This document shows, piece by piece, positions 32,317-56,576 of a DNA stretch of 64,000 bases. Both the position numbers and the translations under genes were made by a program. The stretch spans positions 1 to 64,000 of IMG/VR virus record IMGVR_UViG_3300009181_000033; one strand, 5' to 3'. The notes beneath the pieces were generated by a model, which saw only the letters and a program-made list of their open reading frames with translations, did no database searches and was not told where the DNA came from. Numbering within the stretch: position 1 is the stretch's first letter; each line of letters opens with the position of its first letter.

Positions 32317-32346
32317 AATATAACCAATGATCGCTTATTTTTTCAC
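32317..32346 (-). promoter_or_regulatory. Early/middle promoter candidate GTGAAA-N18-TATATT
   Basis: Ends 19 nt upstream of tRNA-Leu; matches four other GTGHAM-N18-TA sites. Confidence 0.55.
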
Positions 32347-32348
32347 CT

Positions 32349-32741
32349 CTAAATCAATTTAAGATTACCTGTGATTTCATCAATTCTCTCTGGATCATCC
32401 GGACCTATTGCGGCACACAAAATTTCTTCATCAAAATCATTTTTGTTTTTTGGAGAATTTGTCATTGAATATGATGACAATCCGGCCATTTCTGCCTTGA
32501 ACAATATGTTTTTAAGAGCCTCTTCTGAAGAGACCCCGAGAATAATTCTCATTGATTTACCTTGCATCCAGTCTGATTCCTGGGGTGTCAGGTTGACCTT
32601 AAGAGTGTCACCTCTTTCAGAAACATTATTGTCAACTAAAAATTCGCAGGATATTTTTGCTGCCATTGCGACCATGGCAGCCCTTTTTAACTTTAGATCT
32701 CTTCTGATAAGTATGACCTGTTTTGGATCGTTCACGGACAT
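32349..32741 (-). CDS. Pth2-family peptidyl-tRNA hydrolase homologue (possibly inactive)
   Basis: KQVILIRRDLKL N-terminus, IILGVSSEEAL, C-terminal AAIGP-x4-RIDEITGNLKL; GK-x2-AQ-x2-HA and DAG-x-T motifs not seen. Confidence 0.75.
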   Translation of the reverse strand: MSVNDPKQVILIRRDLKLKRAAMVAMAAKISCEFLVDNNVSERGDTLKVNLTPQESDWMQGKSMRIILGVSSEEALKNILFKAEMAGLSSYSMTNSPKNKNDFDEEILCAAIGPDDPERIDEITGNLKLI

Positions 32742-32770
32742 TCTCCCGTATCAGGATTCTATAACACATT

Positions 32771-33226
32771 TTATATTTGTTCCAAATCCAATCTCAAATG
32801 TTCCCTAATTTCCATCAATAATTTACCCAACCAGTTTTGACCGGAACCACGACAGACTCCCCAAAATTTATCATTCCAAGTATTTTCATTTATTAATTTG
32901 GCGCTACCGGTTTTTATCAGTTGGTCGGCCAAAAATGGACTTTCAAACTTTTGTTTCAAAAAATCTTTCATTAGGGTTATTTTGATTTCTTCCCAATCCT
33001 CCCTGAGCTGTAAACATCGACCGAGTTTTTTAGCCTCCTTGGGTCCGGGAGCTTTCCTTATTAACTCCCTTGCATTTTCATCCATCGTTTTTGAGGCCTG
33101 GTATGCGTGCTCAACAGTCGGATATGGCCTCTTGTCTATGTAAATTGTGCTAGGGTGATAATTTGACAAAAAACCATGCCCTGCTCCCAAAGTAAAACTT
33201 TTTATTTCATTATTTGATTGAGTCAT
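32771..33226 (-). CDS. NADAR/YbiA-family hydrolase
   Basis: FLSNY, YPTVEHAYQASK, EAKKLGR, DWEEIK, ENTWNDKFWG, GQNWLGKLLMEIR. Confidence 0.92.
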   Translation of the reverse strand: MTQSNNEIKSFTLGAGHGFLSNYHPSTIYIDKRPYPTVEHAYQASKTMDENARELIRKAPGPKEAKKLGRCLQLREDWEEIKITLMKDFLKQKFESPFLADQLIKTGSAKLINENTWNDKFWGVCRGSGQNWLGKLLMEIREHLRLDLEQI

Positions 33227-33230
33227 TTAG

Positions 33231-33255
33231 GGCCCCAAGGGGAATCGAACCCCTG
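33231..33255 (-). pseudogene. 3' fragment of a tRNA-Glu-like gene (T-arm plus acceptor 3' strand)
   Basis: CAGGGG-TTCGATT-CCCCT-TGGGGCC; no intact 5' half upstream. Confidence 0.6.
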
Positions 33256-33332
33256 AAATAAATATCTAAACTTAGATCTCTTTCCAAAGATGGAGCAACG
33301 GGCAAACATTAAATGCTTGCCAATCGATTATT

Positions 33333-33620
33333 TCACTTCTTGATGGTGGGCGTAACAACAGCTGTTGTTGTGGGTATTGTAGAAGAATTTGTGGTGGTCG
33401 CTGGAACAACGGCGGTCGAAGTTGGACATGGCACGACTGGCGATGTGGTCGCAGAAGAAGCCGAAGTTGTTGGTGCAGCAGTTGGTGCCACACCGACGTC
33501 AGCTGCAACAGCGGCACTGGTTACACCACCAGCACCACCGGCTGATGAATCAGTCGACTTTGAAGAACAACCCACTAAACCAAAAAGACTAGTCACAATA
33601 ACGACAGATAGTGTTTTCAT
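33333..33620 (-). CDS. Low-complexity Thr/Ala/Pro-rich lipoprotein
   Basis: Signal MKTLSVVIVTSLFG with lipobox LVGC; SD GGAG upstream. Confidence 0.75.
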   Translation of the reverse strand: MKTLSVVIVTSLFGLVGCSSKSTDSSAGGAGGVTSAAVAADVGVAPTAAPTTSASSATTSPVVPCPTSTAVVPATTTNSSTIPTTTAVVTPTIKK

Positions 33621-33735
33621 TTTTACTCCTGGTTCCTATTTTTGAACCTGCACATTATTTATTGCATTTCAATAACCGTGTATAAAATTGTTTTAATACA
33701 CGAATTGTTTGTAGGCAGATAAAAAATCATTTCGC

Positions 33736-33742
33736 ATACTTA
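33736..33742 (+). promoter_or_regulatory. Putative late promoter motif ATACTTA
   Basis: 8 nt upstream of the fibre ATG at 33751. Confidence 0.45.
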
Positions 33743-33750
33743 GAGTTAAA

Positions 33751-36700
33751 ATGGCTAGTAGAAAAGACGTTCAAAGGAATAAAAAAGTCTATCCTTTCTC
33801 AAGGGTAGCACCGAGATATGCTGCAGCTAGCGACACTGAAGAAGTGAACAAGCTGGATTGGAAGCGATCCGTTAGGCTGGCTTCAGCTGTTTTGGAAAAC
33901 ATTAGCGATCTCACGTTGATTCCCATGACAATAGATGGGATCACCTTGAACGCCGGTGATAGAGTGTTGCTTAAGTCACAAACAACGGCTTCCGAAAACG
34001 GAATCTATGTATACGGGCCTACAGGACTCACGAGAACAATAGACGCAGACGTCAATACATTGTCTTCCGGGGCAGCTTGTTTCGTCGAAACGGGAACCAC
34101 GAATTCCGCAACAATGTGGTATTTGGCCACAAATGACCCGATAACCGTCGGAACCACGCCGCTCTCGTGGATGAGATTCTTTCCAGACAGCTCTGGCGGC
34201 GGCGGGTCTTTTTGGTCTTCCACATATTTAAACGGTATTTTTACCACCGGTTCGGTTGCCATCAGGGGGACAGAGTCAATAATCTCAAAAGCATCAGACA
34301 AAGGATCGGATGTTTTCTTTTATGTTAGCGGCTCTGTAAATTCGAAGGACGTCAGCATTGGTACTTCCCTCTTCGGTGGAGATGTTTTTATAAGTGGTTC
34401 GACGTACGTCGACGCTGGTTTGTTGGAGGTGACTGGAACAATTTCACTAAGTGGATCTCTGCAGCATGGAATAAATGTGAGTGCGAATGGCGCAAATTCT
34501 CATGCTGGCGGCATCTCAACCACTGCATCCGGAAATGGATCGCACGCAGAAGGATACCTGACAATAGCATTGGGTTCTGGTGCACATGCAGAAGGTGCAC
34601 TTTGTTTGGCATCTGCTGATTATTCCCATGCCGAAGGTTCGAGAACCACGGGTTCATTTAACTATGCACATGCTGAAGGTGAATTAACAACTGCTTCTGG
34701 ATATGCTTCCCACACTGAAGGATATGCAACTACGGCTATAGGTACGGCGTCTCATGCACAAGGACTTTACACAATAGCATCTGGCAGCTATCAAGCTGTG
34801 GCCGGAAGATACAATGTCAGAAACAACACGTCATCCCTTCTTGTTGTGGGAAATGGAACGGGGGATTCAAATGCCCTAAGAAGCGATGTATTGAGAATAG
34901 AACAGGGATCTGCAGGAAATGGGAGAGTGGAAGTCACTGGTTCAATTTATGCAACGACTGGTTTCTCTGGTTCCTTAACAAAATTGACAGACGGAAGTTC
35001 TTATCTCATAGCCGGTTCTAATATTACACTCTCCACGGGATCTAATGGTGCGGTAACGATTGCATCTGCAGGCGCCAGCACACCTGGTTCTAATAATCAG
35101 GTTTTAACTTCTGATGGCACAGGTAACGCAGTAGCTGAGACTAATTTAACGTTTGATGGCACTCGATTATACGTGACAGGTGCCTTTACTCAGGGTAGTA
35201 ATACCTACGCATCCGGTCCTAATGCACATGCGCAAGGTAGCAGTACATTTGCAACAAATACGAACTCTCATGCTGAAGGACTTGGCTCCGTTGCATCAGG
35301 TTTTCAATCTCATGCTGAAGGTTACTACACAGTGGCGAGTAATTATCAAGCTCATACTGAAGGCTATGGAACGTTGGCTTCTGGGAATGCGTCTCATGCC
35401 GAAGGGTATCAAACGGCTGCTTCAGGAGATAATTCTCACGCAGAAGGTTTTAAAACGTTGGCTTCTGGGTATGCGTCTCATGCCGAAGGCTATGGAGCGT
35501 TGGCTTCTGGATATGTTTCTCACACAGAAGGTTTGTATACGACAGGATCTAACTCTTATTCTCACGCTGAAGGCATGAGGACGACAGCGTCAGGACAAGG
35601 CTCTCATTCCGAAGGATATTTAACAATAGCATTGGGTTCTGGTGCTCATGCAGAAGGCACCCTGAGTTTTGCTTCAGGAAATTACTCCCACGCCGAAGGT
35701 GCTAGAACAACAGGGTCTTTTGATTATGCGCATGCTGAAGGTGAATTAACAACTGCTTCTGGATATGCTTCACACGCAGAAGGATACTTCACAAGCGCAT
35801 CAAATTATTATTCACACGCCGAAGGATTTGGAACTCTAGCCGGATATGCAGCCCACTCTGAAGGTTATTTTACAACAGGCAGTGGAGGATGGTCTCATGC
35901 TGAAGGCAATGCAACAATAGCCTCTGGAAACTGGTCTCATGCTGAAGGCGACAGTACACTTTCGACTGGCAATTATTCACATTCTGAAGGAGAAGGAGGG
36001 ACAACAGCTTCAGGCACTAGTTCTCACGCTGAAGGTTATAACACTACAGCTTCAGGTCGTCGCTCTCACGCTGAAGGCGATAGCACTACGGCTTCGAATC
36101 TAGGGGCACATGCTGAAGGACTAAGTACGACTGCATTGGGTCAATACTCCCACGCGGAAGGTGGAACTACGATTGCATCTGGCTCTCGCTCCCATGCAGA
36201 AGGTGTCAACACTCTTGCACTAGGTGTTGGATCACACACTGAAGGTCGTTTTACGACAGGCAGTGCTGCTTATTCCCACGCTCAAGGATTGAGGACAGAA
36301 GCTAGCGGAACTTACTCTTTTGCGGGTGGATTGTGGACGATAGCCTCAGGCTCTGGACAAACTGTCTTCGGTCAGTATAATCAAAGAGGAAATGACTTCT
36401 CACTCTTTGTGATAGGTAATGGAACTGATGATGCTACAAGAAGCGACATTTTGAGAGTCACTCCGTCTCGGGTAGAGATAACCGGATCTCTGAGCACCAA
36501 TTCGCTTTATGCGAATTATGTGGGATCATCACTCGCAGACACGGATGGTGCTTCTTATCTCATTGTATCCGCTGATTATTGCATTGGATTTAATAACGTA
36601 AATTCATCAACAAACACCAACATTAATTACATAACCCTTCCAGATGCTAGCGTTTCTGCGATGATTGGTAGAATTGTTGTTGTTAAAATCACGGCGGCTG

Positions 36701-36876
36701 CAGCTTCATGTGCACTTAAGAAGGTGAGGTGTACAGGCTCTGGAACCATTGATGGATCAGCAGTTGCAACACTTCAAAAAGATGTAATGACTAGTGTAAC
36801 GTTCATGTGCATAGCAATAGGCACTTGGGCAATCATATCAACATACGGCGGAACCGTCACTCTCGGCGCGACATGA
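33751..36876 (+). CDS. Fibre protein with YadA-head-like 14-aa repeats
   Basis: N-terminal DWKRSVR..IDG..GDRVLLKSQ..ENGIY module; about 34 SHAEG-type repeats in two blocks; LLVVGNG necks. Confidence 0.85.
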   Translation: MASRKDVQRNKKVYPFSRVAPRYAAASDTEEVNKLDWKRSVRLASAVLENISDLTLIPMTIDGITLNAGDRVLLKSQTTASENGIYVYGPTGLTRTIDADVNTLSSGAACFVETGTTNSATMWYLATNDPITVGTTPLSWMRFFPDSSGGGGSFWSSTYLNGIFTTGSVAIRGTESIISKASDKGSDVFFYVSGSVNSKDVSIGTSLFGGDVFISGSTYVDAGLLEVTGTISLSGSLQHGINVSANGANSHAGGISTTASGNGSHAEGYLTIALGSGAHAEGALCLASADYSHAEGSRTTGSFNYAHAEGELTTASGYASHTEGYATTAIGTASHAQGLYTIASGSYQAVAGRYNVRNNTSSLLVVGNGTGDSNALRSDVLRIEQGSAGNGRVEVTGSIYATTGFSGSLTKLTDGSSYLIAGSNITLSTGSNGAVTIASAGASTPGSNNQVLTSDGTGNAVAETNLTFDGTRLYVTGAFTQGSNTYASGPNAHAQGSSTFATNTNSHAEGLGSVASGFQSHAEGYYTVASNYQAHTEGYGTLASGNASHAEGYQTAASGDNSHAEGFKTLASGYASHAEGYGALASGYVSHTEGLYTTGSNSYSHAEGMRTTASGQGSHSEGYLTIALGSGAHAEGTLSFASGNYSHAEGARTTGSFDYAHAEGELTTASGYASHAEGYFTSASNYYSHAEGFGTLAGYAAHSEGYFTTGSGGWSHAEGNATIASGNWSHAEGDSTLSTGNYSHSEGEGGTTASGTSSHAEGYNTTASGRRSHAEGDSTTASNLGAHAEGLSTTALGQYSHAEGGTTIASGSRSHAEGVNTLALGVGSHTEGRFTTGSAAYSHAQGLRTEASGTYSFAGGLWTIASGSGQTVFGQYNQRGNDFSLFVIGNGTDDATRSDILRVTPSRVEITGSLSTNSLYANYVGSSLADTDGASYLIVSADYCIGFNNVNSSTNTNINYITLPDASVSAMIGRIVVVKITAAAASCALKKVRCTGSGTIDGSAVATLQKDVMTSVTFMCIAIGTWAIISTYGGTVTLGAT
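35180..36370 (+). repeat. Tandem 42-bp (14-aa) repeat block, about 27 units
   Basis: Recurring (A/S)SG-x2-SHAEG-x2-T pattern in the translation. Confidence 0.9.
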
Positions 36877-36894
36877 TAAAACCCCACGTGTATT

Positions 36895-37338: not shown

Positions 37339-38650
37339 AGGCGCTCAGAACCTTCGTATCGACGTCGGAAGGATCACGGAACCTACAGAACACTGGGAAT
37401 CTTACCTTGCCATCCGCCGTAAGGCCGTCAGTGGTCAGTGGATCAGGCTGGCCTTCCACTTCAGCAATCTTGCCGATCCATGAATCAGGATCAACATTAA
37501 TCTCGGCCTTAAGCTTGTCCGTGAACCCGCCGCCGCACCGTGTCACCACACCATTCGGCATGAGAATCTCGAAACCTCCCCACATTCCTTCACGCTTGGA
37601 ACCACGGCGACCCTCGTAATGTCCGACAATGACGCCTTCATGAGTGGCAACCGGCTTGAGCTTAACCACTGAATCAGATCGCTTAAATACATAGGGAGAC
37701 TCAAGGCGCTTCACCATGATGCCTTCGTATCCGCCTTCCATCGACTTGGAATAGAAGTCCATCAGGTCCGCTTCTCCATCAACAGACTTGCCTGGAACCT
37801 GTACGACGTGTGTCGAACCGACTTCCTTGACAAGATCAGTAACGAGACCGATTCGATCTTCGAGAGTAGATTCATTTGTCTGGTCGCGCCAATCTTCAAA
37901 GTGCATGGCATCAAAGACGTGAAAAATCATGCCACTGTCATCTTTGCCTTTCTTGTGTGACATGACAACAGATGCTGACTCATTCCAATCCTGACCCATG
38001 CATTCCCCATCGAGAACAAAGTCATCCCAGGAAGCAGCCTCAAGGGCAGACTTAATTGTTGGCAGTGTCTCAAGCACACTTCCACTTCGCGTAAACATGG
38101 TCACTTCACCATTATGTTTCACAGCAATACATCGAAGACCATCGAGCTTAGGCTCGACACGAACTGGATAGTCGATGGGATCATCGATGACAATTCCCTT
38201 ATCAACCTCGAAGTGGGAGGTTAGCGATTCGGCCAGCTGCACCGAGAACTTGGCTACGGCTCCTGGCCAGGTTTTATCAACAATCGAAGAAGATGCACCA
38301 ACCCTGAGATTACGAAGCAAGATACGAAGGCACCATTTCTGCTGCGGACCAGTCATATCAATAAACAACCTCACGACTAGGTCTTTTGCCGCATTGCCGG
38401 TAACTTTTCTTGAGGACAATTTTTCGTAGATTTCCTCAAGAAAATGCTCAACAACGAGATCATCAGCACCAATTCCTTCTGCTTTGGGCATCTTGAATTT
38501 ATTCACGTAGAAATTGGTGTATGGATCACCGACTGCAACGAAGATGCGCTTGAGGAGATCGTTCTTGCTGCTACGCTCGAGAAGGTCTTCCTTGAAGAGG
38601 CGGGAGTTGTCAGACTCTAGGGCTTCGAGAATGTCGATGACGCTGTTCAT
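37310..38650 (-). CDS. lig: ATP-dependent DNA ligase
   Basis: Motif I VEPKLDGLR, LDGEC, FHVFD, EGIMVK, KRS-x3-KLK, C-terminal OB fold (GGGFTD, RFPVF). Confidence 0.95.
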   Translation of the reverse strand: MNSVIDILEALESDNSRLFKEDLLERSSKNDLLKRIFVAVGDPYTNFYVNKFKMPKAEGIGADDLVVEHFLEEIYEKLSSRKVTGNAAKDLVVRLFIDMTGPQQKWCLRILLRNLRVGASSSIVDKTWPGAVAKFSVQLAESLTSHFEVDKGIVIDDPIDYPVRVEPKLDGLRCIAVKHNGEVTMFTRSGSVLETLPTIKSALEAASWDDFVLDGECMGQDWNESASVVMSHKKGKDDSGMIFHVFDAMHFEDWRDQTNESTLEDRIGLVTDLVKEVGSTHVVQVPGKSVDGEADLMDFYSKSMEGGYEGIMVKRLESPYVFKRSDSVVKLKPVATHEGVIVGHYEGRRGSKREGMWGGFEILMPNGVVTRCGGGFTDKLKAEINVDPDSWIGKIAEVEGQPDPLTTDGLTADGKVRFPVFCRFRDPSDVDTKVLSAFEKWNNNGG

Positions 38651-38656
38651 ATTCCT

Positions 38657-38686
38657 ATATTACCTCGCAAAAAGTTGACTTTGCAC
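38657..38686 (-). promoter_or_regulatory. Early/middle promoter candidate GTGCAA-N18-TAATAT
   Basis: Ends 6 nt upstream of the ligase start codon. Confidence 0.6.
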
Positions 38687-39447: not shown

Positions 39448-39916
39448 AAGTAAAGCAAGGGTAATAGTCTGCGCCGTAATCAGTGCCGATTGTCAACCAG
39501 GTGTGGCCGGTATTAACATCTTTGAGAACCCATCCTGAAAATGCATCAATCCTTGCTCTGTCATCATCAATTTCATTACCTTCATCATCGTATCTCATGT
39601 GGACTCGGGTGGACTTTCCACCGTGCTGAAGGGCTACTTTTGCAATTGAATTTTTAAAAAATATCTTGCCCACTTCTAGCGTTTTAAAACACTCAAAATA
39701 TGATCGATATCCATCGCTAGGGTTTTCAACTGCTTCCAAGACCATTTTGGAGCCGTTTGCTCCAATACAAAAACAATTGTTGTCTACGCCGTAAAAATCA
39801 TATACCCCATTGATTAGGCTGTTAAATAATTTGTGATCAAATCTATTATCAATATCTTCTTCATCAAAATAACAACCGACCATGTGCCCTGTTCTTCCTC
39901 TAAGACAAGGTAACAA
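39389..39916 (-). CDS. Hypothetical protein
   Basis: 175 aa ORF; true start is probably the internal Met (MVGCYF). Confidence 0.6.
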   Translation of the reverse strand: MLPCLRGRTGHMVGCYFDEEDIDNRFDHKLFNSLINGVYDFYGVDNNCFCIGANGSKMVLEAVENPSDGYRSYFECFKTLEVGKIFFKNSIAKVALQHGGKSTRVHMRYDDEGNEIDDDRARIDAFSGWVLKDVNTGHTWLTIGTDYGADYYPCFTFDYTPDKNQKLENDHEHSQ

Positions 39917-39955
39917 AAAAATTCGGGACGTTGCACCAACGTCCCGAATAAAAAA
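39915..39955. terminator. Bidirectional intrinsic terminator
   Basis: 13-bp stem ATTCGGGACGTTG/CAACGTCCCGAAT with A-runs on both sides. Confidence 0.85.
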
Positions 39956-41118: not shown

Positions 41119-41406
41119 TCAGTGGTTCGATTTTACATCGATTGTCTGCAAAATTTCACAGATGCCTTGTTGAAATTGCGGGGAACGAATAATTTGATCC
41201 AATCTCTGCTCTGAGACATTAACATCCCACTCCTTCAAAATAGGAACGGCAAATTTTCGCATTACACGTAAAACATAATTGCGTGCTGAAGAGTGATTCA
41301 TTTTAAAACCAATTGACGACATTGTATCTGCAATGTCTCTATAATTGATGCCGTCATTCTCCACCACAGTAGCATACGAAGGCTTCTTCGAACTATTCTT
41401 CATCAT
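41119..41406 (-). CDS. Stand-alone sigma region-4-like HTH protein
   Basis: DGINYRDIADTM....NHSSARNYVLRVMRKF aligns by eye with the sigma4.2 pattern EGLSYEEIAE....TVKSRLHRARKKL. Confidence 0.6.
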   Translation of the reverse strand: MMKNSSKKPSYATVVENDGINYRDIADTMSSIGFKMNHSSARNYVLRVMRKFAVPILKEWDVNVSEQRLDQIIRSPQFQQGICEILQTIDVKSNH

Positions 41407-41671
41407 TTACCTTTCGCAATTTTCCCATTGCCATGGGAGAAAATCTAGATTGCTGCAAAACAGCCAGCCTTTTAGCTAAATCAAAATCAGTATCATATTC
41501 ATTTTTAAGGACAATATCCTTATTTTGTTTTTCGTTCCTCTTCGACAAGAGGAATTTGCATTCCTTTATGTCATTAGACAAACTTCGGACTAAAAATAAT
41601 GTGCTGAGTGAAATAATAGCTGAGGAAAAGAACAGCATTAATTCAAGTACAAAATTTATTCCAATGCGCAT
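41393..41671 (-). CDS. Small membrane protein
   Basis: Hydrophobic N-terminal helix [22 protein letters not shown]. Confidence 0.6.
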
Positions 41672-42468
41672 CCTGCCTCTAATGCAACTAATTCTTCTGG
41701 TGAAATAAAATAATCTGAACGATTATCTGGTTCGTCAAACAAACCGAACCGCAATCTTAAAATTGCCGCCTCCTTTTCCGAGAGTGTCATCAATACACTT
41801 TTGACAATTCCCATCAATTCCTTTGAAGAAACGTTAAAGAACGGATCGTTACTTTCCTCTGTGTCCTCAAGTCTTTCCTCAAGAGTTGCAGCATCAGGAT
41901 CATTGGACACAGATTGATTCAAAGAGACAATATTCTTCCCAGAAGAAAGAGTTGCCTTCACAACAGTTTCAGACGCATCTACGATATCTGCCAAATCCCC
42001 ATCAGAAGGATCACACCCCATTTGCTCACGAAATTCTTCGGTTGCTTGCAGCAATTTCTTTTGAAGCGTTGCAGCATGGGCAGGCAATCTAATCATGCGT
42101 TTTCGCTTCAGCACATGTTGACTAATGGCTTGTTTGATCCACCAAGTTGCATAAGTTGAAAAACGAAAACCTTTTTTGTGATCGAATCTTTCGATTGCCT
42201 TTAGTAGGCCTAAATTACCTTCCTGAATGAGGTCCTCAAGAGGAATATTATGGCCTTTGTGCTTTTTTGCAATGGAGATTACAAGGCGAAGATTACTTTC
42301 GATAAGCTTTTTTCTAGCCTTTTCACCTACAGTACCACCTGTTGCATATTGCTGAAAAAGATCGATGACCTCCGGGTGTTTAAGCTGTGTAAATGATTTC
42401 ATGTCATTCAAATAGGAATGAATGATATCACTGTTTGAAAACGAGCCAATCTTAAAAGTTTCTGCCAT
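41656..42468 (-). CDS. RpoD/SigA-like group 1/2 sigma factor lacking region 4.2
   Basis: Region 1.2 IHSYLNDM; region 2 [28 protein letters not shown]-x2[17 protein letters not shown]; region 3 IRLP; region 4.1 [15 protein letters not shown], then ends with no TRERIRQIE helix. Confidence 0.92.
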
Positions 42469-42941: not shown

Positions 42942-42971
42942 ACCATAATCATCACACTTTCAAAAGTACAC
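42942..42971 (-). promoter_or_regulatory. Early/middle promoter candidate GTGTAC-N18-TATGGT
   Basis: Ends 6 nt upstream of GTG 42935. Confidence 0.55.
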
Positions 42972-43209: not shown

Positions 43210-43575
43210 TTAGCTCCTTAAATCTAAGATCCCCCATTCATTGGGGTCAATCGTGTAAACGACTTTCGTGACACCCACACCCCTCAGTCTACGCTCACAG
43301 CCAGGACATGGCTTGGCTAGTGCCCAGTCACCTGTTCCTTTTGCGACCCTTGCCACCCAAACCACAGAACCATGTGTAAGCTTTCTTACTAGTCTTGTTT
43401 CTGCATGATGTCTTGGTGCACAGTCAGGCGCTGCAATATTCCTGGATGAAACAAGAACTCCATCATTCCGAAGACCCATCGCACCCAACCAAAAAGTGCG
43501 ATTGTCATCAGATCGATTTCTACCTTGCAAGGCAGCATCAGCTGCCAATTGCAGCATTTTCTTATCTGAAGCCAT
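43210..43575 (-). CDS. Single-domain cytidine/deoxycytidylate deaminase-family protein
   Basis: HAE-x(25-30)-PCPGC zinc-binding signature. Confidence 0.85.
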   Translation of the reverse strand: MASDKKMLQLAADAALQGRNRSDDNRTFWLGAMGLRNDGVLVSSRNIAAPDCAPRHHAETRLVRKLTHGSVVWVARVAKGTGDWALAKPCPGCERRLRGVGVTKVVYTIDPNEWGILDLRS

Positions 43576-43586
43576 GTGCTATTCTT

Positions 43587-43616
43587 GTTATATCACCGTC
43601 TTGCAAAATCTTGCAC
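43587..43616 (-). promoter_or_regulatory. Early/middle promoter candidate GTGCAA-N18-TATAAC
   Basis: Ends 11 nt upstream of the deaminase ATG; TG extended -10 present. Confidence 0.6.
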
Positions 43617-46926: not shown

Positions 46927-46985
46927 ATGATACCTTAAATATATTTTGTTTCTTGCATTAATACACACTAATTTTAAAAACTAAA

Positions 46986-49197: not shown

Positions 49198-49340
49198 GAT
49201 TTGAAAATGTTGGACATTTTCTCATACGTATTTTAGCTCCGAAGAGTTATTGACGTACATCTTCTGAAATCCTTGTAGAAAGTCCACGAAGTTTTCAGTT
49301 TGGGCAAACCATCTGCCCATGTGTCGTTTGGCTATGTTAG
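49198..49340 (-). ncRNA. Predicted TnpB omegaRNA (reRNA) scaffold overlapping the tnpB 3' end
   Basis: Hairpins TGGGCA/TGCCCA (49301-49319), CTGAAA/TTTCAG, CTC-TTCG-GAG (49237-49246), and terminal GAAAATGT/ACATTTTC (49203-49221) immediately before the right end. Confidence 0.55.
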
Positions 49341-50442
49341 TAGCCGAATTTAGGTCTCTATCAACTATCAAACCTGGTTCTAGTTCAACCTCTCTTATTG
49401 ATAGTTCTGAACTTAGTGTCTTGATCCCGGTCAAACAGTTGATTTGAGATGTGTAACTTTCATCGACTAGATGAAAATCTATTCCCGCATTCCTCGCTTT
49501 GTAATCAAGGAATGTTTTGAACCTAGACAACGTGCCTTGGTTCTGTGTGGACTTGTTAAGTCTTTTAGTTGAACGCTTGCCTTTTGGAAGCTTTTTAGTC
49601 TGAATATCACCAACAATCATTGTTCCAACTTTTTCTTTCAAACACGTGTCAACAATCACCTTGCTGACTTTATGCTGAAAATCTTTGTTCTTGTTGGAAT
49701 TTTTCCTAGCTAGTTTTTTATGAACTGAAGTTAACTTCTTCCAACGATTTGAACCTTTCTTCTTTTTGTCGCGAAGACTTTGAACATGTTCTTTTTGTCT
49801 TTCAGCCTTCTTGAACCTGTTGTTCTGAACTGCAAAAGGCTTCGTGGAATTTGAGAAACAGGTGGCAATTGAACTTACTCCTAAATCTATCGATAGAAAT
49901 TTTTCCCTGTCAAGATCATCATTCGTTGGCTTTTCAGAATAAGTGAAGATCAAAAAGCACTTCCCTTCTTCCTCTTTAACAACCATTGTTTTGATTGTGA
50001 CGTTTGTCACACCACACTTACGAACATAGTCTGGTAGATCTATGTTTAATTTGTGCCCATCGATCAATGAGATCTGAACGCCTTGTTCAAGGAGTTTAAA
50101 CCCGCCACTTCCGTTGTTCCAATGAAATTGGAACGTACAAAAATTCTTGTAGGACTTAAACTTATAGGGAAATTGTGCAGTTGAATCTTTCTTCTTCAAG
50201 GCATAGAATGATTTGATTGAATCAAATAGTGTTCTACTTGTGGTTTGCGCTGGGTGTGACAAGATCGTTAGTTGATTATCATTCCTGAAATTCTTATATC
50301 GCTGATTGAGTTGCTTAAAATCTTCACCTTTCTTAGCAAATTCAAGCAAATGATTGTAGAGCAACCTGTGCTCGTTTGAAAGAGTTCGAATGACAATAAC
50401 TTGTTGTCGTGAAGGAAAGATTCTAACCTTTAGAGATTTCAT
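49222..50442 (-). CDS. tnpB: TnpB RNA-guided nuclease (IS607-associated)
   Basis: KVRIFP N-terminus; RuvC-I SIDLG, RuvC-II IVGDI, RuvC-III DRDLNSATNI; YKA-x2-AG, ESYTSQ. Confidence 0.9.
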   Translation of the reverse strand: MKSLKVRIFPSRQQVIVIRTLSNEHRLLYNHLLEFAKKGEDFKQLNQRYKNFRNDNQLTILSHPAQTTSRTLFDSIKSFYALKKKDSTAQFPYKFKSYKNFCTFQFHWNNGSGGFKLLEQGVQISLIDGHKLNIDLPDYVRKCGVTNVTIKTMVVKEEEGKCFLIFTYSEKPTNDDLDREKFLSIDLGVSSIATCFSNSTKPFAVQNNRFKKAERQKEHVQSLRDKKKKGSNRWKKLTSVHKKLARKNSNKNKDFQHKVSKVIVDTCLKEKVGTMIVGDIQTKKLPKGKRSTKRLNKSTQNQGTLSRFKTFLDYKARNAGIDFHLVDESYTSQINCLTGIKTLSSELSIREVELEPGLIVDRDLNSATNIAKRHMGRWFAQTENFVDFLQGFQKMYVNNSSELKYV

Positions 50443-51052: not shown

Positions 51053-51065
51053 CTAACAATAGATA

Positions 51066-51490: not shown

Positions 51491-51790
51491 GTTCTATAAG
51501 GTAAACAATATTACATCTATGTTTAAATAGATCAATATTTTGATCACCGTTTGAAAATTATGCCTAGGACTTGATTTCAAAGATGTTTTATGATTTCATC
51601 TATTTTTCTCGAACGCTCCAAATTTCTTTTTGAAGTTTATCAAGTTCGCCTCGTCAAACCCAGAAATCCCTAACCGTGTGGCTCAAATCTAAGATCATCA
51701 CTTAGGTTTTCACGTCTTCATCATTGAATCGTTCGTAGACCAGGTCGCATAGAAAAACAATATTGCTATAAGACAAATTTGGACAACTTA

Positions 51791-52081: not shown

Positions 52082-52284
52082 GTTTTTAATTATTAATGTT
52101 GCCACGTTTTTATTTTTCTATATCGAATTAAATTAAAAAACGGTGTTATATCTAAATGCTAACTCTTGGAAGAAAAATAGGTTCAAATTTTTGCATGTTG
52201 TTAATTAACATTGTGGGCCCATTGCTCCCGGGAAACATAACATCAACATCATTCAGGTCATAAAAGTAGACTAGAAGTGGCAAC

Positions 52285-52980: not shown

Positions 52981-53162
52981 ACCACTCACCATCATCTTCT
53001 CTTTGAACACACTTTTTGTGTATTTCTAGAAATGCTAGAAAAATATTTTTATTCATGGTTGAATATATTCAATAATGAATATTTATTGACGTTGAGACGT
53101 GTCGTGCACTAACGCACTTCATGCTTGACAACCTCAAAGTAATTACAAAGGAAGGTTTTTAT

Positions 53163-55457
53163 ATGGCTCAAACACATATACAACAGCATCAGATTAGCGG
53201 CTCGCTTTCAATGGACATCTCAGATAATGTCGAGCGCAATAATTTGGTTAAAGCAGGTCGCACAATTATTGACGACCTCAATTCACTTCGCTCACAGGTG
53301 AAAGGAATTCTCGGTTCAGCCGCATGGACCGACGAACAATCCATCTCCCTGCAGAACCTTAAGGCTCAGTTGACGGGAACCTTGGTTGCCAACTCAGCTT
53401 CTTTTGCCAGTGCCGTTTATGTGAGCGGTGCAGGTTCATTGGTGGTTGATGGCGCAGCTACATTTAACGAGGCAGCTGACTTCAACAATGGCATTACCGC
53501 TGATGTACTAAAGATCGATGGAGACGTCTCACAAAGACTCTACATCGTTGGTACCTCTGGTGAACTCAAAGACGAGTCAAAGCTCGTCTTCAATGGCTCA
53601 GCACTCACCGTGGACGGAGACCTCAACATCTCCGGAAGCTCAGTGTTTGCCAACCCAGCCGACTTTAACAATGGAATCACCACTGATGAACTAAAGGTTG
53701 ACGGCGACGTCTCACAACGTCTCTACATCGTTGGTGCCTCTGGTGAGCTCAAGGACGAAGAGAAGCTCGTCTTCAACGGTTCAGAACTCACAGTTGACGG
53801 CGGACTTAATGTCTCCGGAAGCATTGTGATGGGTGGGACTATCACGCTCAACGAAGCAGCCGACTTCAACAAAGGAATCACCGCTGATGAACTAAAAATC
53901 GACGGTGACACAGCCCAACGTCTCTACATCGTTGGTGCTTCTGGTGAGCTCAGGGACGAAGAGAAACTAACGTTTGATGGTTCAGAGTTAAATGTAACAG
54001 GGGATCTAGAGATCAGCGGAGCTGCTGACCTCAATGGTGCCTTGGATGTTGCTGGTCAAGTTGACCTCGCTGCCTCAGAGGTTGCCACCAACGTTCGTGG
54101 TACACTTTCAGTGGCGGAAGCCGCTGACCTCAATGGCACCCTAGACGTCGCTGGTCAAGTTGACCTCGCTGCCTCAGAGGTTGCCACCACAATCCGTGGC
54201 ACACTAAATGTTGCTGAGGAAACAACCCTCGCTTCTGCCAAGGTTTCTGACCTCACTCAGACTTATATTGTCTTCGCTGGTCTCGATGGCGCTCTTGAAG
54301 ACAGTGAGGCTCTCTCCTTCGCCTCAAACCAACTAACAGTTGGTGCTTCTGGCGCAGCTGGTTCTGTCACCATCAAGAATGCCTCTGGTGATCCAATCTT
54401 GCAAGCTGGCTCCGGTGAGCTAGTGATGCGTGACAACAATGGCGATGCAGTCTTGTACGTCAACTCGGTATCCAAGACCTTTGATCTGAAGAATGTTGAT
54501 GGAGACTCTACATTCCATGTTGCAGCAGCGTCAGGTAATACAGAGGTTGCCGGTACATTAGATTCAGCTGGTGACTTTGCGGTCGCCTCTGACAAATTCA
54601 CTGTCGCAGCAGCATCAGGTAACACCGCAGTTGCTGGTACATTAGATGTCACCGGGAACGCAATCTTTGCAGGAAACGTTCAGGTCGACGGAGATCTTCG
54701 CGTCAAGGGTTCGATGACCTACATCGACACCGTCAACATTCGCGTCGAGGATGCATTCATCTATCTCGCCACCGGCTCACTTGGATCCACCGATTCAGGT
54801 GTTGTCCTTCACGGTGGTGCTGGTGCTGATATGGACCTTGCCATCGCCCAAAAGGGCGGCTCTGGTGAGTTCATATTCGGCAAGGGCAATCGTGCCCCTG
54901 ACGGAGAAGGTGCTCTTGACGGAATGGTTCTCGTTCCTGCCAAGCTCAGTGAGGTAAAGTTCGGCTCAGCCGAAAATGCCCTCAGCGGCTCAATGTCAAT
55001 CGCCGGAAACGATATCAAGCTCGCCGCCTCGGCCGCTGCAATCGTATTCGACGATGCTTACCGTGCTTCTTCAACATACGCTGCTCCCATTAAGCTCGCC
55101 GCCTCGGCGTCCGAGTGGTCAGCGTTCCAGACACAGTATCCCGGCAAATCACTTCTCGGTGCCCTTGGTGCCGGCGGTGGTGTCGGTGTCAACTTCCGCA
55201 AGAAGATAATCATGGGGAACAATGCTAACTTCAGCGGCAATACACTTGACATCGCTGCAGCCGGCGTCGGTTCTCTTCGCAGCACCGCTCAGGCAGACTC
55301 CGACTATGGTCTCGATGTCTACCTCAACGGTGTCCTCTTGGCTCTCGGCGCTAGCGCCGACTACACAGTGCCAAGCGTATCACAAATCAGCTTCAACTAT
55401 GCTTTGAACAGCGATGACGTTCTCACAATCGTCGCCAAGAACATCGCATCTGCCTGA
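53163..55457 (+). CDS. Long beta-repeat fibre protein
   Basis: Start re-called at MAQTHI with SD AAGGAAGG; internal 61/67/55-aa and 33-aa repeats; VEDAFIYL..G trimer-fibre motif; C-terminal DVYLNGVLL..DYTV module. Confidence 0.8.
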   Translation: MAQTHIQQHQISGSLSMDISDNVERNNLVKAGRTIIDDLNSLRSQVKGILGSAAWTDEQSISLQNLKAQLTGTLVANSASFASAVYVSGAGSLVVDGAATFNEAADFNNGITADVLKIDGDVSQRLYIVGTSGELKDESKLVFNGSALTVDGDLNISGSSVFANPADFNNGITTDELKVDGDVSQRLYIVGASGELKDEEKLVFNGSELTVDGGLNVSGSIVMGGTITLNEAADFNKGITADELKIDGDTAQRLYIVGASGELRDEEKLTFDGSELNVTGDLEISGAADLNGALDVAGQVDLAASEVATNVRGTLSVAEAADLNGTLDVAGQVDLAASEVATTIRGTLNVAEETTLASAKVSDLTQTYIVFAGLDGALEDSEALSFASNQLTVGASGAAGSVTIKNASGDPILQAGSGELVMRDNNGDAVLYVNSVSKTFDLKNVDGDSTFHVAAASGNTEVAGTLDSAGDFAVASDKFTVAAASGNTAVAGTLDVTGNAIFAGNVQVDGDLRVKGSMTYIDTVNIRVEDAFIYLATGSLGSTDSGVVLHGGAGADMDLAIAQKGGSGEFIFGKGNRAPDGEGALDGMVLVPAKLSEVKFGSAENALSGSMSIAGNDIKLAASAAAIVFDDAYRASSTYAAPIKLAASASEWSAFQTQYPGKSLLGALGAGGGVGVNFRKKIIMGNNANFSGNTLDIAAAGVGSLRSTAQADSDYGLDVYLNGVLLALGASADYTVPSVSQISFNYALNSDDVLTIVAKNIASA
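53475..54218 (+). repeat. Internal tandem repeats of the fibre gene
   Basis: Three ADFN-x-GIT..QRLYIVG-x-SGEL units starting at 53475, 53658 and 53859; two near-identical 99-bp units starting at 54021 and 54120. Confidence 0.9.
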
Positions 55458-55477
55458 GGTTAATCTGTTAACAAAAT

Positions 55478-55509
55478 GAATGCGGGCGGGAAATTTCCCG
55501 CCCGCATTC
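55478..55509. terminator. Perfect 32-bp GC-rich palindrome, probable terminator of the fibre gene
   Basis: GAATGCGGGCGGGAAA/TTTCCCGCCCGCATTC, 21 nt after the stop. Confidence 0.75.
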
Positions 55510-55533
55510 TCTATTTGGAATATAATTAATAAC

Positions 55534-56127
55534 ATGAGCAGCCAAGTAAATCAAACAATAGAAGCATTATTAAATCACTCCAACAACAAGTTGGAAACTT
55601 CAAAAACATCAAATGTCTTTTCACAAGGTGCCGTTCAGGCTTCAAAGGAAATAGTCGCTTCCTTTGCTGAACACATTATCAAGCGTCGTGACGAATACGC
55701 CAATTTAGTCAAGCAAGAAAAAATGACGGCCGAGGCGGCCAACTTTGCGTTAACTCAGCTTAGGAGCGTCTCACTCTTTCTAGAGGAAAAGTTCAGAGAT
55801 TGCGAGAAGATAAGCTACGTAAAACAAGGCGAGCTCATAAGCATTAACTCCCAGGTCAACGAACTCCAAACTCTCCTCAGGGAAACAAACCAACAACATG
55901 TGCAAGTCACACCAGAGCCAATTCCTGTGGAAGCGGCACCTGTTTCTATTGAGCAGAAGGAAGAAAATTCTGTCGTAGAGCCCGTGATTGTTAAAAAAAG
56001 ACCAGATGAAATGGACACAAGAATTGGTAAAGCTGCCAAAGATATTAAAAACAGAAGAAAAGAAGCACAGGCCTTATCTTCACAAGTTCAAACAGAAATA
56101 AAGCGTCCAGGGCGACCCAAAAAATAA
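55534..56127 (+). CDS. Helical hypothetical protein with C-terminal AT-hook-like motif
   Basis: Start re-called at MSSQV (ATAATTA 5 nt upstream, 55522-55528); ends KRPGRPKK. Confidence 0.65.
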   Translation: MSSQVNQTIEALLNHSNNKLETSKTSNVFSQGAVQASKEIVASFAEHIIKRRDEYANLVKQEKMTAEAANFALTQLRSVSLFLEEKFRDCEKISYVKQGELISINSQVNELQTLLRETNQQHVQVTPEPIPVEAAPVSIEQKEENSVVEPVIVKKRPDEMDTRIGKAAKDIKNRRKEAQALSSQVQTEIKRPGRPKK

Positions 56128-56136
56128 TCAAATGGT

Positions 56137-56320
56137 CTAAGCCTTGTCTTCTCCATTTTCTCTCAAATAAATTTCATAACGTTTTTCATCGGAACACAAA
56201 ACATCGCCTACTATTAACCCAGGAAATTCCTCTGTCAAGTATTTGCAAAAGAATTCCTACTCTTAAATCATTTGGGGAAGAACTGGCATTCCATTCAACC
56301 AAGTTACCTTGTTTAGAATT
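56137..56320 (-). pseudogene. Frameshifted KOW-like gene remnant
   Basis: KQGNLVEW..RVGILLQIL in one frame continues as LIVGDVLCSDEKRYEIYLRE in another; no intact start. Confidence 0.45.
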
Positions 56321-56321
56321 C

Positions 56322-56540
56322 TCACGCGAGTGGCCTTAACCCTTCCAGGCGCACCCAACCCACCATTCCATCCACTAGCACCCTGTAATATGGAACATCC
56401 GTATTGGAAAAACCGAAATCTAAACAAACTGCAATCGATTTCTCGCTAAATGTTCCCACAAAAATTCGATGATGCCCAATGATATTCTTATAGATCTGTC
56501 TATCACCAAATGCAGACATCAACAAATCGCCAGGCTTCAT
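56322..56540 (-). CDS. KOW/SH3-like small protein
   Basis: MKPGDLL..RVLVDGMVGWV. Confidence 0.65.
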   Translation of the reverse strand: MKPGDLLMSAFGDRQIYKNIIGHHRIFVGTFSEKSIAVCLDFGFSNTDVPYYRVLVDGMVGWVRLEGLRPLA

Positions 56541-56546
56541 GAGTCC

Positions 56547-56576
56547 ACATTACCACAGCCGAAACAACATTTACAC
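56547..56576 (-). promoter_or_regulatory. Early/middle promoter candidate GTGTAA-N18-TAATGT
   Basis: Ends 6 nt upstream of ATG 56540. Confidence 0.55.

What the first reader, a model, noticed from the sequence alone, without database searches (positions are those of the whole stretch)
32317..56576. Five promoters with non-canonical -35 GTG(A/C/T)A(A/C) and an exact 18-bp spacer
Seen, all on the minus strand and just upstream of gene starts: GTGAAA-18-TATATT (32346), GTGCAA-18-TAATAT (38686), GTGTAC-18-TATGGT (42971), GTGCAA-18-TATAAC (43616) and GTGTAA-18-TAATGT (56576). A 17-bp variant GTGTAT precedes the tRNA cluster (46966). Inference: a phage-specific early/middle promoter class distinct from TTGACA-N17, and the natural target of the phage RpoD-like sigma or its detached HTH.
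Basis: partly seen in the sequence, partly recalled or inferred. Interest (0 to 1): 0.6.

Follow-up and report, generated by a model that had tools for sequence, protein, structure and literature searches.

The report
Phage promoter class making leaderless mRNAs
A widespread group of uncultured freshwater giant phages carries its own conserved promoter signal (GTGCAAA, exactly 18 bases, then TAnnnT), placed so that the transcript should begin right at the start codon.

Summary
The window is the first 64 kb of a complete 298-kb metagenomic jumbo phage.

**Motif.** Genome-wide the consensus is G-T-G-C-A-A-A (-36 to -30), T-15 G-14, TAnnnT (-12 to -7), C-1, then ATG. There are about 45-49 sites. 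In 28 of them the start codon lies exactly 6 nt after the -10 box, which implies leaderless mRNAs.

**Conservation.** The signal is conserved in more than 80 related phage contigs, including two relatives with 47-59% G+C. It holds its position at orthologous genes, namely the DNA ligase gene and the sigma operon.

Three are good members (38686, 43616, 56576). One is borderline (32346), one fails (42971), and the "17-bp variant" (46966) is a different motif. Three window sites were missed (60157, 60454, 62455).

**Sigma factor.** The phage RpoD-like sigma stops before the region 4.2 recognition helix. Two small conserved HTH proteins could replace that helix. However, the sigma operon itself sits behind this same promoter type, so the host holoenzyme must fire it at least weakly.

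**Who reads the -35 box.** This is unresolved: about 0.45 for a phage-encoded sigma-4-like module, about 0.35 for the host sigma alone. A second motif without a -35 box, ATA(C/T)TTA, marks structural genes.

The parts
38657..38686 (-). Class A promoter of the DNA ligase gene (GTGCAAA-N17-TAATAT). The ATG at 38650 lies 6 nt after the -10 box, so the transcript is predicted to be leaderless.
   Evidence: Scores 13.7 bits with the relatives-only matrix. In 41 distinct relatives the footprint is conserved at -35, -34, -32, -31, -15, -14, the -10 box and -1.
43587..43616 (-). Class A promoter of the sigma operon (GTGCAAG-N17-TATAAC), with an 11-nt leader before the ATG at 43575.
   Evidence: Scores 10.6 bits. 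A class A site lies upstream of the orthologous gene in 33 of 42 distinct relatives.
56547..56576 (-). Class A promoter (GTGTAAA-N17-TAATGT). The ATG at 56540 lies 6 nt after the -10 box; it opens a 72-aa ORF.
   Evidence: Scores 14.3 bits. GTGTAA is the second commonest -35 variant in relatives.
60128..60157 (-). The ATG at 60121 is predicted to start a leaderless transcript.
   Evidence: Scores 17.9 bits. Also seen.
60425..60454 (-). The ATG at 60418 is predicted to start a leaderless transcript.
   Evidence: Scores 12.0 bits. Also seen.
62426..62455 (-). The ATG at 62419 is predicted to start a leaderless transcript.
   Evidence: Scores 15.3 bits. Also seen.
32317..32346 (-). Borderline class A-like site (GTGAAAA-N17-TATATT), 18 nt upstream of tRNA-Leu(CAA), which lies at 32298-32216.
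   Evidence: Scores 5.6 bits, just under the 6-bit cut. The tRNA was found and the sequence read. Conservation in relatives was not tested.
42942..42971 (-).
   Evidence: Scores -0.9 bits. None of 52 distinct relatives has a class A site upstream of the orthologous gene.
41130..41159 (-). Sequence match (GTGAAAT-N17-TAAAAT) inside the 3' end of the 95-aa ORF, 22 nt before the next gene. Status is uncertain.
   Evidence: Scores 11.6 bits, but it is not conserved: 0 of 56 distinct relatives.
46936..46942 (-). ATATTTA, a class B motif, upstream of the tRNA region.
   Evidence: Sequence read; class B statistics are.
41656..42468 (-). Phage RpoD-like sigma factor (270 aa). It has regions 1.2, 2, 3 and 4.1 but no region 4.2 recognition helix.
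   Evidence: Pfam matches Sigma70_r2 and r3 only. The region 4 profile matches positions 2-18 only. Every solved sigma aligns only up to residue 245-248. The length and the C-terminal tail are conserved in relatives.
41119..41406 (-). Conserved 95-aa HTH-like protein, two genes after the sigma gene.
   Evidence: Present after the sigma gene in all 80 relatives. The motif NYREIA...MNHSSARN is invariant. Leads towards sigma-4 are only weak.

Best explanation
Class A is a clade-specific two-part promoter used by the host core RNA polymerase. No phage polymerase was detected.

How the parts are read:
- A sigma-70-type region 2/3 reads TAnnnT at -12 to -7 and the TG at -15/-14.
- Transcription is inferred to start at the A of the ATG that lies 6 nt after the -10 box, preceded by C at -1. 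About 28 genes in this genome would therefore be made as leaderless mRNAs. Some 15 more have short leaders.
- The asymmetric 7-bp box GTGCAAA, at a rigid 18-bp distance, is read by a monomeric sigma-4-type helix-turn-helix held on the polymerase.

My favoured version is a two-step one.
1. The host holoenzyme fires these promoters weakly through the extended -10 element.
2. This makes the truncated phage sigma and its small HTH partner(s): the 95-aa protein next to the sigma gene and/or the zinc-ribbon region 4.2 protein at 286.8-287.1 kb.
3. These then read the GTGCAAA box and boost the whole class, including their own operon (positive feedback).

What is shown: the motif, its rigid geometry, its conservation, the truncated sigma and the partner genes. 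What is inferred: the start site, the leaderless translation and the identity of the -35 reader.
For: Motif and geometry:
- 44 sites score at least 14 bits against 0-2 in Markov shuffles.
- The relatives-only matrix finds 49 sites. In register, 50 score at least 8 bits against 5-12 when the -35 part is displaced.

Leaderless layout:
- 28 of 49 sites have the start codon at gap 6.
- The base at -1 is C in 22 and T in 5 of those 28.
- The unbiased gap test gives 56 against 11-26. The relative G001 shows the same, 53 against at most 15.

Not copies of one another: the 46 downstream proteins fall into 44 families.

Conservation. Position is kept at the ligase gene and at the sigma operon.

Not a general bacterial signal:
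- The exact 13-base pattern occurs 18 times in this 0.3-Mb phage.
- It occurs at most once per genome in 401 Actinomycetota and 151 Pseudomonadota genomes.
- Canonical TTGACA promoters show no enrichment at any spacer.

A separate class: a TTGAAC-type leaderless promoter keeps that type at one orthologous gene in three genomes.

Sigma and partners:
- The sigma keeps the -10-reading residues ([12 protein letters not shown]) but lacks region 4.2.
- The zinc-ribbon protein matches region 4.2 of SigA/HrdB (Pfam 34.6 bits; PDB E = 3e-6). Two residues of its recognition helix are changed.
- The 95-aa protein is syntenic with the sigma gene in 80 of 80 relatives.

Predicted contact between the sigma tail and the 95-aa protein is weakly supported:
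- Score 0.43, best control 0.00.
- The mark was reached by 58 of 80 solved complexes and 2 of 110 mismatched pairs.
- At 0.60 or under it was reached by only 7 of the 80 solved complexes and by both mismatches.
- The runs agree in at least 67% of contacts; partner pLDDT is at least 64.

Precedent: a split sigma that drives its own promoter, Tn916 Sig7-8.
Against: - No transcript data exist; no RNA run holds this phage.
- The sigma operon is itself under class A, so a reader made by the phage cannot be the first one.
- No other early promoter class was found, so class A looks like the early class, which normally belongs to the host sigma.
- The residue aligned with the Glu that reads the extended -10 TG in known sigmas is variable in the phage sigma family. 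The TG is nevertheless conserved in the promoters.
- At the ligase promoter the -35 box drifts among GTGCAA, ATGCAA, TTGCAA, GTGACA and ATGACA. A canonical region 4.2 might tolerate that spread.
- The 95-aa protein's link to sigma-4 is weak: E = 0.28, Z 3.3-3.8, language-model score at most 0.86. It shows no profile relation to the region 4.2 protein.
- The host is unknown.
Confidence: 0.45

Rival explanations
1. Class A sites are plain early promoters read entirely by the host primary sigma. GTGCAAA at 18 bp is an off-consensus -35 box that region 4.2 of the host sigma accepts. The truncated phage sigma, with the 95-aa protein acting as a T4 gp33-like partner, instead serves the class B motif ATA(C/T)TTA, which has no -35 box and sits before structural genes.
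For: - The sigma operon lies behind class A in most relatives.
- Class A precedes arrays of small genes and DNA-metabolism genes. Class B precedes the fibre, sheath-like and head genes, and holds its position in G001 and G003.
- No canonical early class exists and no phage polymerase was detected.
- T-35 and G-34 coincide with the TG of TTGACA at an 18-bp spacing.
- The promoters conserve an extended -10 TG, while the phage sigma does not conserve the matching Glu.
- A sigma without a region 4.2 helix fits promoters without a -35 box, as T4 gp55/gp33 does (for that parallel).
Against: - C-33 and A-32 (0.59 and 0.93) replace the A and C of TTGACA.
- The pattern is not enriched in any of 552 bacterial genomes sampled.
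- A TTGAAC-type promoter stays distinct at an orthologous gene.
- The phage sigma keeps residues that match the T-7 pocket and A-11 reading of canonical sigmas (the roles of these residues are from memory). That suits TAnnnT better than TA(C/T)TTA.
Confidence: 0.35
2. GTGCAAA is the site of a separate phage activator or repressor that overlaps the -35 position, as the T4 MotA box or the lambda cII site does. It would not be read by a sigma-4 module.
For: - The box is centred near -33 and replaces a canonical -35 box.
- The phage encodes small conserved HTH proteins whose membership in sigma-4 is unproven.
- The extended -10 element would allow initiation independent of a -35 box.
Against: - The spacing is strictly 18 bp: 113 hits against 13 and 11 at 17 and 19 bp.
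- The element is a single asymmetric 7-bp box with no repeat. That is what a reader fixed on the polymerase gives.
- No MotA or AsiA relative was looked for or seen.
Confidence: 0.12
3. These are not promoters. They would be a ribosome-binding or RNA-level signal inside polycistronic mRNAs, or remnants of duplicated gene cassettes.
For: - Some -10 hexamers (TAAGGT, TAGGAT) resemble part of a Shine-Dalgarno sequence.
- A few downstream genes are paralogues.
Against: - Only 10 of 49 hexamers contain GG or GAG.
- The conserved positions are T-12, A-11 and T-7, plus TG at -15/-14 and a pyrimidine at -1.
- The 46 downstream proteins fall into 44 families.
- The spacers are unconserved while the boxes are conserved across relatives.
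Confidence: 0.03

Closest known systems
Sigma-70-type -35/-10 promoters with an extended -10 element (TTGACA-N17-TGnTATAAT)
   Same: It has two boxes plus a TG at -15/-14. The -10 box is TAnnnT. The spacer lies within the 16-18 bp range. A pyrimidine at -1 and a purine at +1 are expected at the start.
   Different: The -35 box is GTGCAAA, with C-A where the canonical box has A-C. The spacer is strictly 18 bp rather than 17 +/- 1. The start codon is fused to the predicted start site.
Leaderless-mRNA promoters of Actinobacteria and Deinococcus-Thermus, phage lambda cI from PRM, and Thermus phage phiYS40 middle/late genes (the phage examples are from memory)
   Same: The -10 box lies 6-7 nt upstream of an ATG, there is no Shine-Dalgarno sequence, and many genes per genome are affected (PMC3898074 and PMC3160421, listed).
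   Different: Here the leaderless layout is coupled to a strongly conserved non-canonical -35 box. It is a property of a phage clade whose G+C content ranges from 43 to 59%.
Split or two-subunit sigma factors: T4 gp55/gp33, SPO1 gp33/gp34, B. subtilis SigO-RsoA, Tn916 Sig7-Sig8
   Same: The sigma functions are spread over separate polypeptides of a mobile element. In Tn916 the pair drives its own promoter in a positive feedback loop.
   Different: Here the large part is a near-complete group-1-like sigma (regions 1.2 to 4.1). It is cut just before the region 4.2 recognition helix. There are two candidate small HTH partners. Neither binding nor function has been tested.
T4 middle promoters (MotA box at -30 plus AsiA, 'sigma appropriation'; from memory)
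   Same: A canonical -10 box is kept while the -35 box is replaced by a phage-specific box. The class drives delayed-early and DNA-metabolism genes.
   Different: No MotA or AsiA homologue was identified. The box sequence and its position differ. In T4 the activator genes sit behind ordinary early promoters, whereas here the sigma operon sits behind the same class.
'Minimal' single-HTH sigma factors and RpoD-like sigmas of jumbo phages (Iyer et al. 2021, PMC7824862)
   Same: Jumbo phages without their own polymerase encode both RpoD-like sigmas and single-HTH sigma-4-like proteins.
   Different: That survey gives no promoter targets and does not describe a truncated RpoD-like sigma.

Membership tests
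Sigma-70-family two-box promoter | -10 hexamer TAnnnT about 7 nt upstream of the start | tested here: met
   T-12, A-11 and T-7 are conserved. The position relative to the start is inferred from the ATG.
Sigma-70-family two-box promoter | -35 hexamer close to TTGACA | tested here: not met
   The consensus is G.75 T.98 G.95 C.59 A.93 A.80 A.52. That is 3 of 6 matches in either register.
Sigma-70-family two-box promoter | Spacer of 16-18 bp | tested here: met
   The spacer is strictly 18 bp.
Sigma-70-family two-box promoter | Transcribed by a sigma-70-family holoenzyme from a mapped start site | not testable with these tools
   There are no RNA runs, the phage is uncultured, and the host is unknown.
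Leaderless mRNA genes | Start codon at the 5' end of the transcript, with no room for a Shine-Dalgarno sequence | tested here: inconclusive
   The geometry fits: the start codon is at gap 6 in 28 of 49 sites, with a pyrimidine at -1 in 27 of those 28. The 5' ends have not been measured.
Split sigma factor | The large subunit lacks a sigma domain that a separate protein supplies | tested here: met
   The sigma lacks the region 4.2 helix. A separate protein at 286831-287106 passes the Pfam Sigma70_r4 cut-off and matches region 4.2 of SigA. It is conserved in 3 of 5 relatives searched; the two without it are 31-44% complete.
Split sigma factor | The 95-aa neighbour (41119-41406) is a sigma-4 domain | tested here: inconclusive
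   Profile against SigR sigma-4: E = 0.28. LuxR/GerE-type HTH folds: Z 3.3-3.8, within noise. Language-model neighbours are all viral Sigma70_r4 clusters, but at 0.80-0.86. No Pfam hit.
Split sigma factor | The subunits bind each other and the polymerase, and both are needed at the target promoter | not testable with these tools
   There is only a weak predicted contact between the sigma tail and the 95-aa protein: 0.43 against 0.00 for controls.
T4-type middle promoter (MotA/AsiA) | MotA-box consensus at -30, with MotA and AsiA genes present | not tested
   The box sequence differs on inspection. No search for MotA or AsiA was run.

The most novel reading that the evidence does not exclude
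This phage clade uses a naturally split primary-like sigma factor. The body (regions 1.2-4.1) docks interchangeable small sigma-4-type heads. One head reads GTGCAAA at a fixed 18 bp, and this drives a self-amplifying programme of leaderless early/middle mRNAs. Without a DNA-reading head, or with the other head, the same body serves the ATA(C/T)TTA class that has no -35 box. That would be a modular sigma with swappable -35 readers, which has not been described for a group-1-like sigma.
Probability: 0.3. Interest if true: 0.8.

Novelty: new variant of a known kind. Interest (0 to 1): 0.62.

Why it matters
**Transcription map.** The result gives a sequence-level transcription map for a large clade of uncultured freshwater jumbo phages. 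At least 130 IMG/VR contigs encode the same sigma.

**Leaderless expression.** It shows leaderless expression used wholesale by a phage, about 28 genes in this genome. That constrains the unknown host to one able to translate leaderless mRNAs.

**A testable question.** It sets up a clean experiment on how a sigma factor cut before its -35-reading helix works, and on which of two small HTH proteins, or the host sigma, reads a rigidly spaced non-canonical -35 box.

**Annotation.** The promoter matrix is also a practical tool. It fixes start codons for dozens of small genes.

Tried and rejected
- **Close cultured relatives.** None was found. Megablast and blastn against phage records gave nothing. 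The best protein matches are 27-37% identical.
- **RNA evidence.** No RNA run holds the phage; all 19 runs listed are DNA kept as contigs, from freshwater and other aquatic or wastewater metagenomes. I therefore did not use read laying, because contigs cannot show 5' ends.
- **Host identity.** It stayed open.
  - No WhiB gene.
  - GroEL is 46-49% identical to a broad spread of mostly proteobacterial GroELs.
  - The polymerase is DnaE-like, as in many actinophages and Bacillus phages.
  - The region 4.2 protein scores best against actinobacterial SigA/HrdB.
  - The sigma body is equidistant from all solved sigmas.
  - Relatives cannot be drawn for a virus record.
- **Fold of the 95-aa protein.** The model is confident (pLDDT 84). 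No structural match rises above noise in the PDB or the Atlas.
- **Link between the two HTH proteins.** A profile-profile comparison showed no relation.
- **Intron between sigma and the 95-aa ORF.** Rejected. Both ORF ends are conserved as protein and Rfam finds nothing there.
- **Hit at 39936.** Rejected as a promoter. The box lies in the loop of a hairpin followed by a T-run, which is terminator-like.
- **Site at 41159.** It scores well but is not conserved.
- **First matrix.** It was seeded on GTGCAA and so undervalued GTGTAA and ATGCAA sites. I replaced it with a matrix trained on relatives only.
Full report
**Context.** The window is the first 64 kb of a single 297,894-bp contig (G+C 0.43). 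It is an IMG/VR virus record with direct terminal repeats, rated complete. It is a jumbo tailed phage:
- tail sheath and baseplate genes;
- a DnaE-like polymerase, DnaB helicase, ribonucleotide reductase, GroEL and an ATP-dependent DNA ligase.

No cultured relative exists in the phage collection. DNA of the phage is found in freshwater metagenomes, and no RNA run holds it. No phage RNA polymerase was detected with Pfam models, so transcription should depend on the host core enzyme.

**Checking the observation.**
- Over the whole genome the pattern peaks sharply at an 18-bp spacer: 22 hits against 4-11 at spacers 13-23.
The box is really GTGCAAA. The -10 hexamer is preceded by G-rich positions. 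In most cases an ATG follows exactly 6 nt after the -10 hexamer.
- A matrix seeded on GTGCAA-N18-TA finds 44 sites at 14 bits or more, against 0-2 in Markov shuffles. Of these, 30 have a start codon (29 ATG, 1 GTG) at gap 6 opening an ORF of 45 aa or more.

**An unbiased test.** Among 1,030 first ATGs of ORFs of 45 codons or more, TAnnnT sits at gap 6 in 56 cases, against 11-26 at every other gap from 0 to 15. Upstream of those 56, GTGCAAA emerges on its own at -36 to -30.

**Conservation.**
- The sigma protein recovers 130 related IMG/VR stretches. The best 80 loci (54-82% identity) were kept.
- In their 920 kb, GTGCAA-N-TAnnn[T/C] occurs 113 times at spacer 18 against 4-15 at spacers 14-22. 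Start codons again lie at gap 6-7.
- Two larger relatives show the same spacer peak, although their composition is very different: G003 (160 kb, G+C 0.47-0.59) and G001 (309 kb, G+C 0.556). G001 also shows the gap-6 ATG peak.

**A matrix independent of this genome.** I trained a two-component model only on relatives. It places 142 of 377 distinct leaderless-type sites in the class.
- Frequencies: G-36 0.75, T-35 0.98, G-34 0.95, C-33 0.59, A-32 0.93, A-31 0.80, A-30 0.52, T-15 0.54, G-14 0.74.
- Applied to this genome it gives 49 sites of 6 bits or more. In register, 50 sites reach 8 bits against 5-12 when the -35 part is displaced by 1-3 bp.
- Of the 49, 28 have the start codon at gap 6. The base before the ATG is C in 22 and T in 5 of those 28. 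A pyrimidine at -1 and a purine at +1 are the usual preference at start sites (established knowledge).
- The 46 downstream proteins fall into 44 families. The shared upstream signal is therefore not a by-product of recent duplication.

- 38686 (ligase), 56576 and 43616 are members.
- 32346, before tRNA-Leu, is borderline at 5.6 bits.
- 42971 fails, and none of 52 distinct relatives has a site at that position.
- The 17-bp GTGTAT "variant" at 46966 fails. That stretch carries ATATTTA at 46942-46936, the second motif described below.
- A hit at 39936 lies in the loop of a terminator-like hairpin. A hit at 41159 is not conserved.

**Phylogenetic footprints.**
- In 41 distinct ATG-anchored ligase upstream regions, conservation is confined to -35, -34, -32, -31, the TG at -15/-14, the -10 box and C-1. 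The spacer is free.
- At this one promoter the box drifts among GTGCAA, ATGCAA, GTGAAA, TTGCAA, GTGACA and ATGACA.
- A class A site lies upstream of the first gene of the sigma operon in 33 of 42 distinct relatives, and before the second gene in 12 of 28. It is found directly before the sigma gene in none of 58, before the 95-aa ORF in 1 of 54, and before its downstream neighbour in none of 56.

**Phage-specific or general?**
- The exact 13-base pattern occurs 18 times in this 0.3-Mb genome, 9 times in G001 and 4 times in G003.
- It occurs at most once per genome in 401 Actinomycetota and 151 Pseudomonadota genomes of 1.2-9.9 Mb. These are samples, so the statement is "not found in those searched".
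- Canonical TTGACA-like boxes show no spacer preference and are rarely intergenic.
- A few leaderless promoters have TTGAAC or TTGTAC boxes at a similar distance, before GroEL and replication genes. One of them keeps that type at the orthologous gene in three genomes.

**The sigma factor and its possible partners.**
- The 270-aa protein at 41656-42468 has Pfam regions 2 and 3. It keeps the -10-reading segment [12 protein letters not shown].
- It aligns to every solved sigma only up to residue 245-248, just after LRLRFGL. The region 4 profile matches positions 2-18 only.
- The remaining 25 or so residues are conserved as protein in relatives but are not a recognition helix.
- In all 80 relatives the gene order is the same: two or three small genes, sigma, a variable stretch of 150-720 nt, the 95-aa ORF, then a 120-aa ORF.

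The 95-aa protein has an invariant NYREIA...MNHSSARN segment and a confident helical model. Its link to sigma region 4 rests on three weak leads only:
- a SigR sigma-4 match at E = 0.28;
- LuxR/GerE-type folds at Z 3.3-3.8, within noise;
- language-model neighbours that are all viral Sigma70_r4 clusters, at 0.80-0.86.

A predicted contact between the sigma tail (residues 205-270) and the 95-aa protein has weak support:
- score 0.43, best control 0.00;
- the mark was reached by 58 of 80 solved complexes and 2 of 110 mismatched pairs;
- at 0.60 or under it was reached by only 7 of the 80 solved complexes and by both mismatches;
- the runs agree in at least 67% of contacts, and partner pLDDT is at least 64.

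A second candidate lies at 286831-287106 on the plus strand.
- It is a small protein with four conserved cysteines followed by a clear region 4.2: Pfam 34.6 bits against a cut-off of 24.1, and E = 3e-6 to SigA/HrdB region 4.2 in the PDB.
- It begins at the point where the phage sigma's homology stops.
- Its recognition helix reads TRMRICQIE where primary sigmas have TRERIRQIE. In E. coli numbering these are E585 and R588, both contacts to the -35 box (numbering and roles from memory).
- It is conserved in 3 of 5 relatives searched. The two without it are 31-44% complete.

**A second promoter-like class.**
- Unbiased k-mer enrichment upstream of genes ranks ATACTTA first: 17 of its 26 genome copies lie within 60 nt upstream of a gene, in sense orientation. 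ATATTTA comes next, ahead of GTGCAAA.
- The same holds in G001 (12 of 25).
- This class has no -35 box. It often sits 5 nt before an ATG, or 15-20 nt before it with a Shine-Dalgarno sequence.
- It precedes the YadA-like fibre gene (33736), large structural genes (21684, 53079, 241123) and a head-related gene (244291).
- It holds its position at two orthologous genes in G001 and G003.

**How it most likely works.** The geometry is that of a sigma-70-family promoter: a -10 box, an extended -10 TG, one asymmetric 7-bp box at a rigid distance, and a pyrimidine/purine start. A single asymmetric box at a fixed spacing points to a monomeric reader held on the polymerase, that is, a sigma-4-type module.

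Two readings remain.
- **(a) A phage-encoded reader.** The phage's split sigma reads the box. This explains why the box is phage-specific, why C-33 and A-32 replace the canonical A-C, why the spacer is rigid, and why a truncated sigma always travels with small HTH proteins.
- **(b) The host sigma alone.** The host primary sigma reads class A as the early class, and the truncated sigma serves class B, in parallel with T4 gp55/gp33.

The strongest point for (b) is that the sigma operon is itself behind class A and that no other early class is visible. The host holoenzyme must therefore fire class A at least weakly, and the conserved extended -10 TG would allow that. A split sigma that drives its own promoter in a feedback loop is known from Tn916.

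I therefore favour a two-step version of (a) at about 0.45, with (b) at about 0.35. That these are promoters giving leaderless mRNAs I hold at about 0.9.

**Comparison with what is known.**
- The class works like a sigma-70 promoter but fails the TTGACA criterion.
- It resembles T4 middle promoters in keeping the -10 box and replacing the -35 box. No MotA or AsiA relative was sought.
- The leaderless layout is as in Actinobacteria and Deinococcus-Thermus (papers listed).
- RpoD-like and single-HTH "minimal" sigmas in jumbo phages have been catalogued without promoter targets.
- What is new here: the consensus, its strict spacing, its coupling to leaderless starts across a phage clade, and a group-1-like sigma cut just before its -35-reading helix.

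Noticed in passing
window 21684(+), 33265(-), 33736(+), 43770(+), 46942-46936(-), 53079(+), 63111(-); genome-wide in G000, G001 and G003: A second promoter-like motif, ATA(C/T)TTA, with no -35 box. Of the 26 ATACTTA copies in the genome, 17 lie within 60 nt upstream of a gene in sense orientation. Many sit before structural genes, often 5 nt before the ATG. The motif holds its position in relatives. It is a candidate late promoter and a possible target of the truncated sigma.
   Followed up: partly
G000 286831-287106 (+) = L012:6831-7106: A small conserved protein with four cysteines (zinc-ribbon-like) followed by a clear sigma region 4.2. Its helix reads TRMRICQIE in place of TRERIRQIE. It lies 245 kb from the truncated sigma gene. 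Its best PDB matches are actinobacterial SigA/HrdB.
   Followed up: partly
window 41407-41655 (-), between the sigma gene and the 95-aa ORF: A variable stretch of 150-720 nt in relatives. Here it holds a non-conserved 92-aa ORF with a hydrophobic N-terminus, and a hairpin (TTCCTCTT ... AAGAGGAA). Its function is unknown. An intron was considered and rejected.
   Followed up: partly
window 49222-50442 (-): A TnpB-like gene (OrfB_IS605 plus the Cas12f1-like TNB domain) inside the phage genome.
   Followed up: no
window 46926-46887 (-): Just upstream of tRNA-Asn(GTT) lies a stretch that looks like the 5' half of another tRNA (acceptor and D-arm). Neither ARAGORN nor Rfam calls it. It may be a tRNA remnant.
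   Followed up: no
window 39914-39946 (-): A terminator-like hairpin (CGGGACG ... CGTCCCG followed by a T-run). Its loop contains GTGCAAC, which produces a false promoter hit.
   Followed up: partly
G000 9677(+), 147357(-), 167444(-), 200443(-), 208485(-): Leaderless-type promoters with TTGAAC, TTGTAC or TTGTCT boxes at the same 18-bp distance, before GroEL, a gene next to the helicase gene, and others. One of them keeps that type at the orthologous gene in G001 and G003. This may be a host-type class.
   Followed up: partly
G000 292121-292350 (L012:12121-12350): A 230-bp divergent intergenic region filled with tandem AATTAGAT-like repeats, lying between oppositely oriented genes. It may be a regulatory or origin-like array.
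   Followed up: no
window 56540, and G000 68508, 69232, 70251, 74431 (-): Several class A genes begin MKPGD/N. Two others begin M.LYR.TFQTEIL. These are small paralogous families in the early-like region whose similarity is mostly N-terminal.
   Followed up: no
window 33751-36876 (+) and 53121-55457 (+): A 1,041-aa protein with YadA-head repeats and a 778-aa protein with bactofilin-like repeats. They are probably fibre or structural proteins, and both lie behind class B motifs.
   Followed up: no
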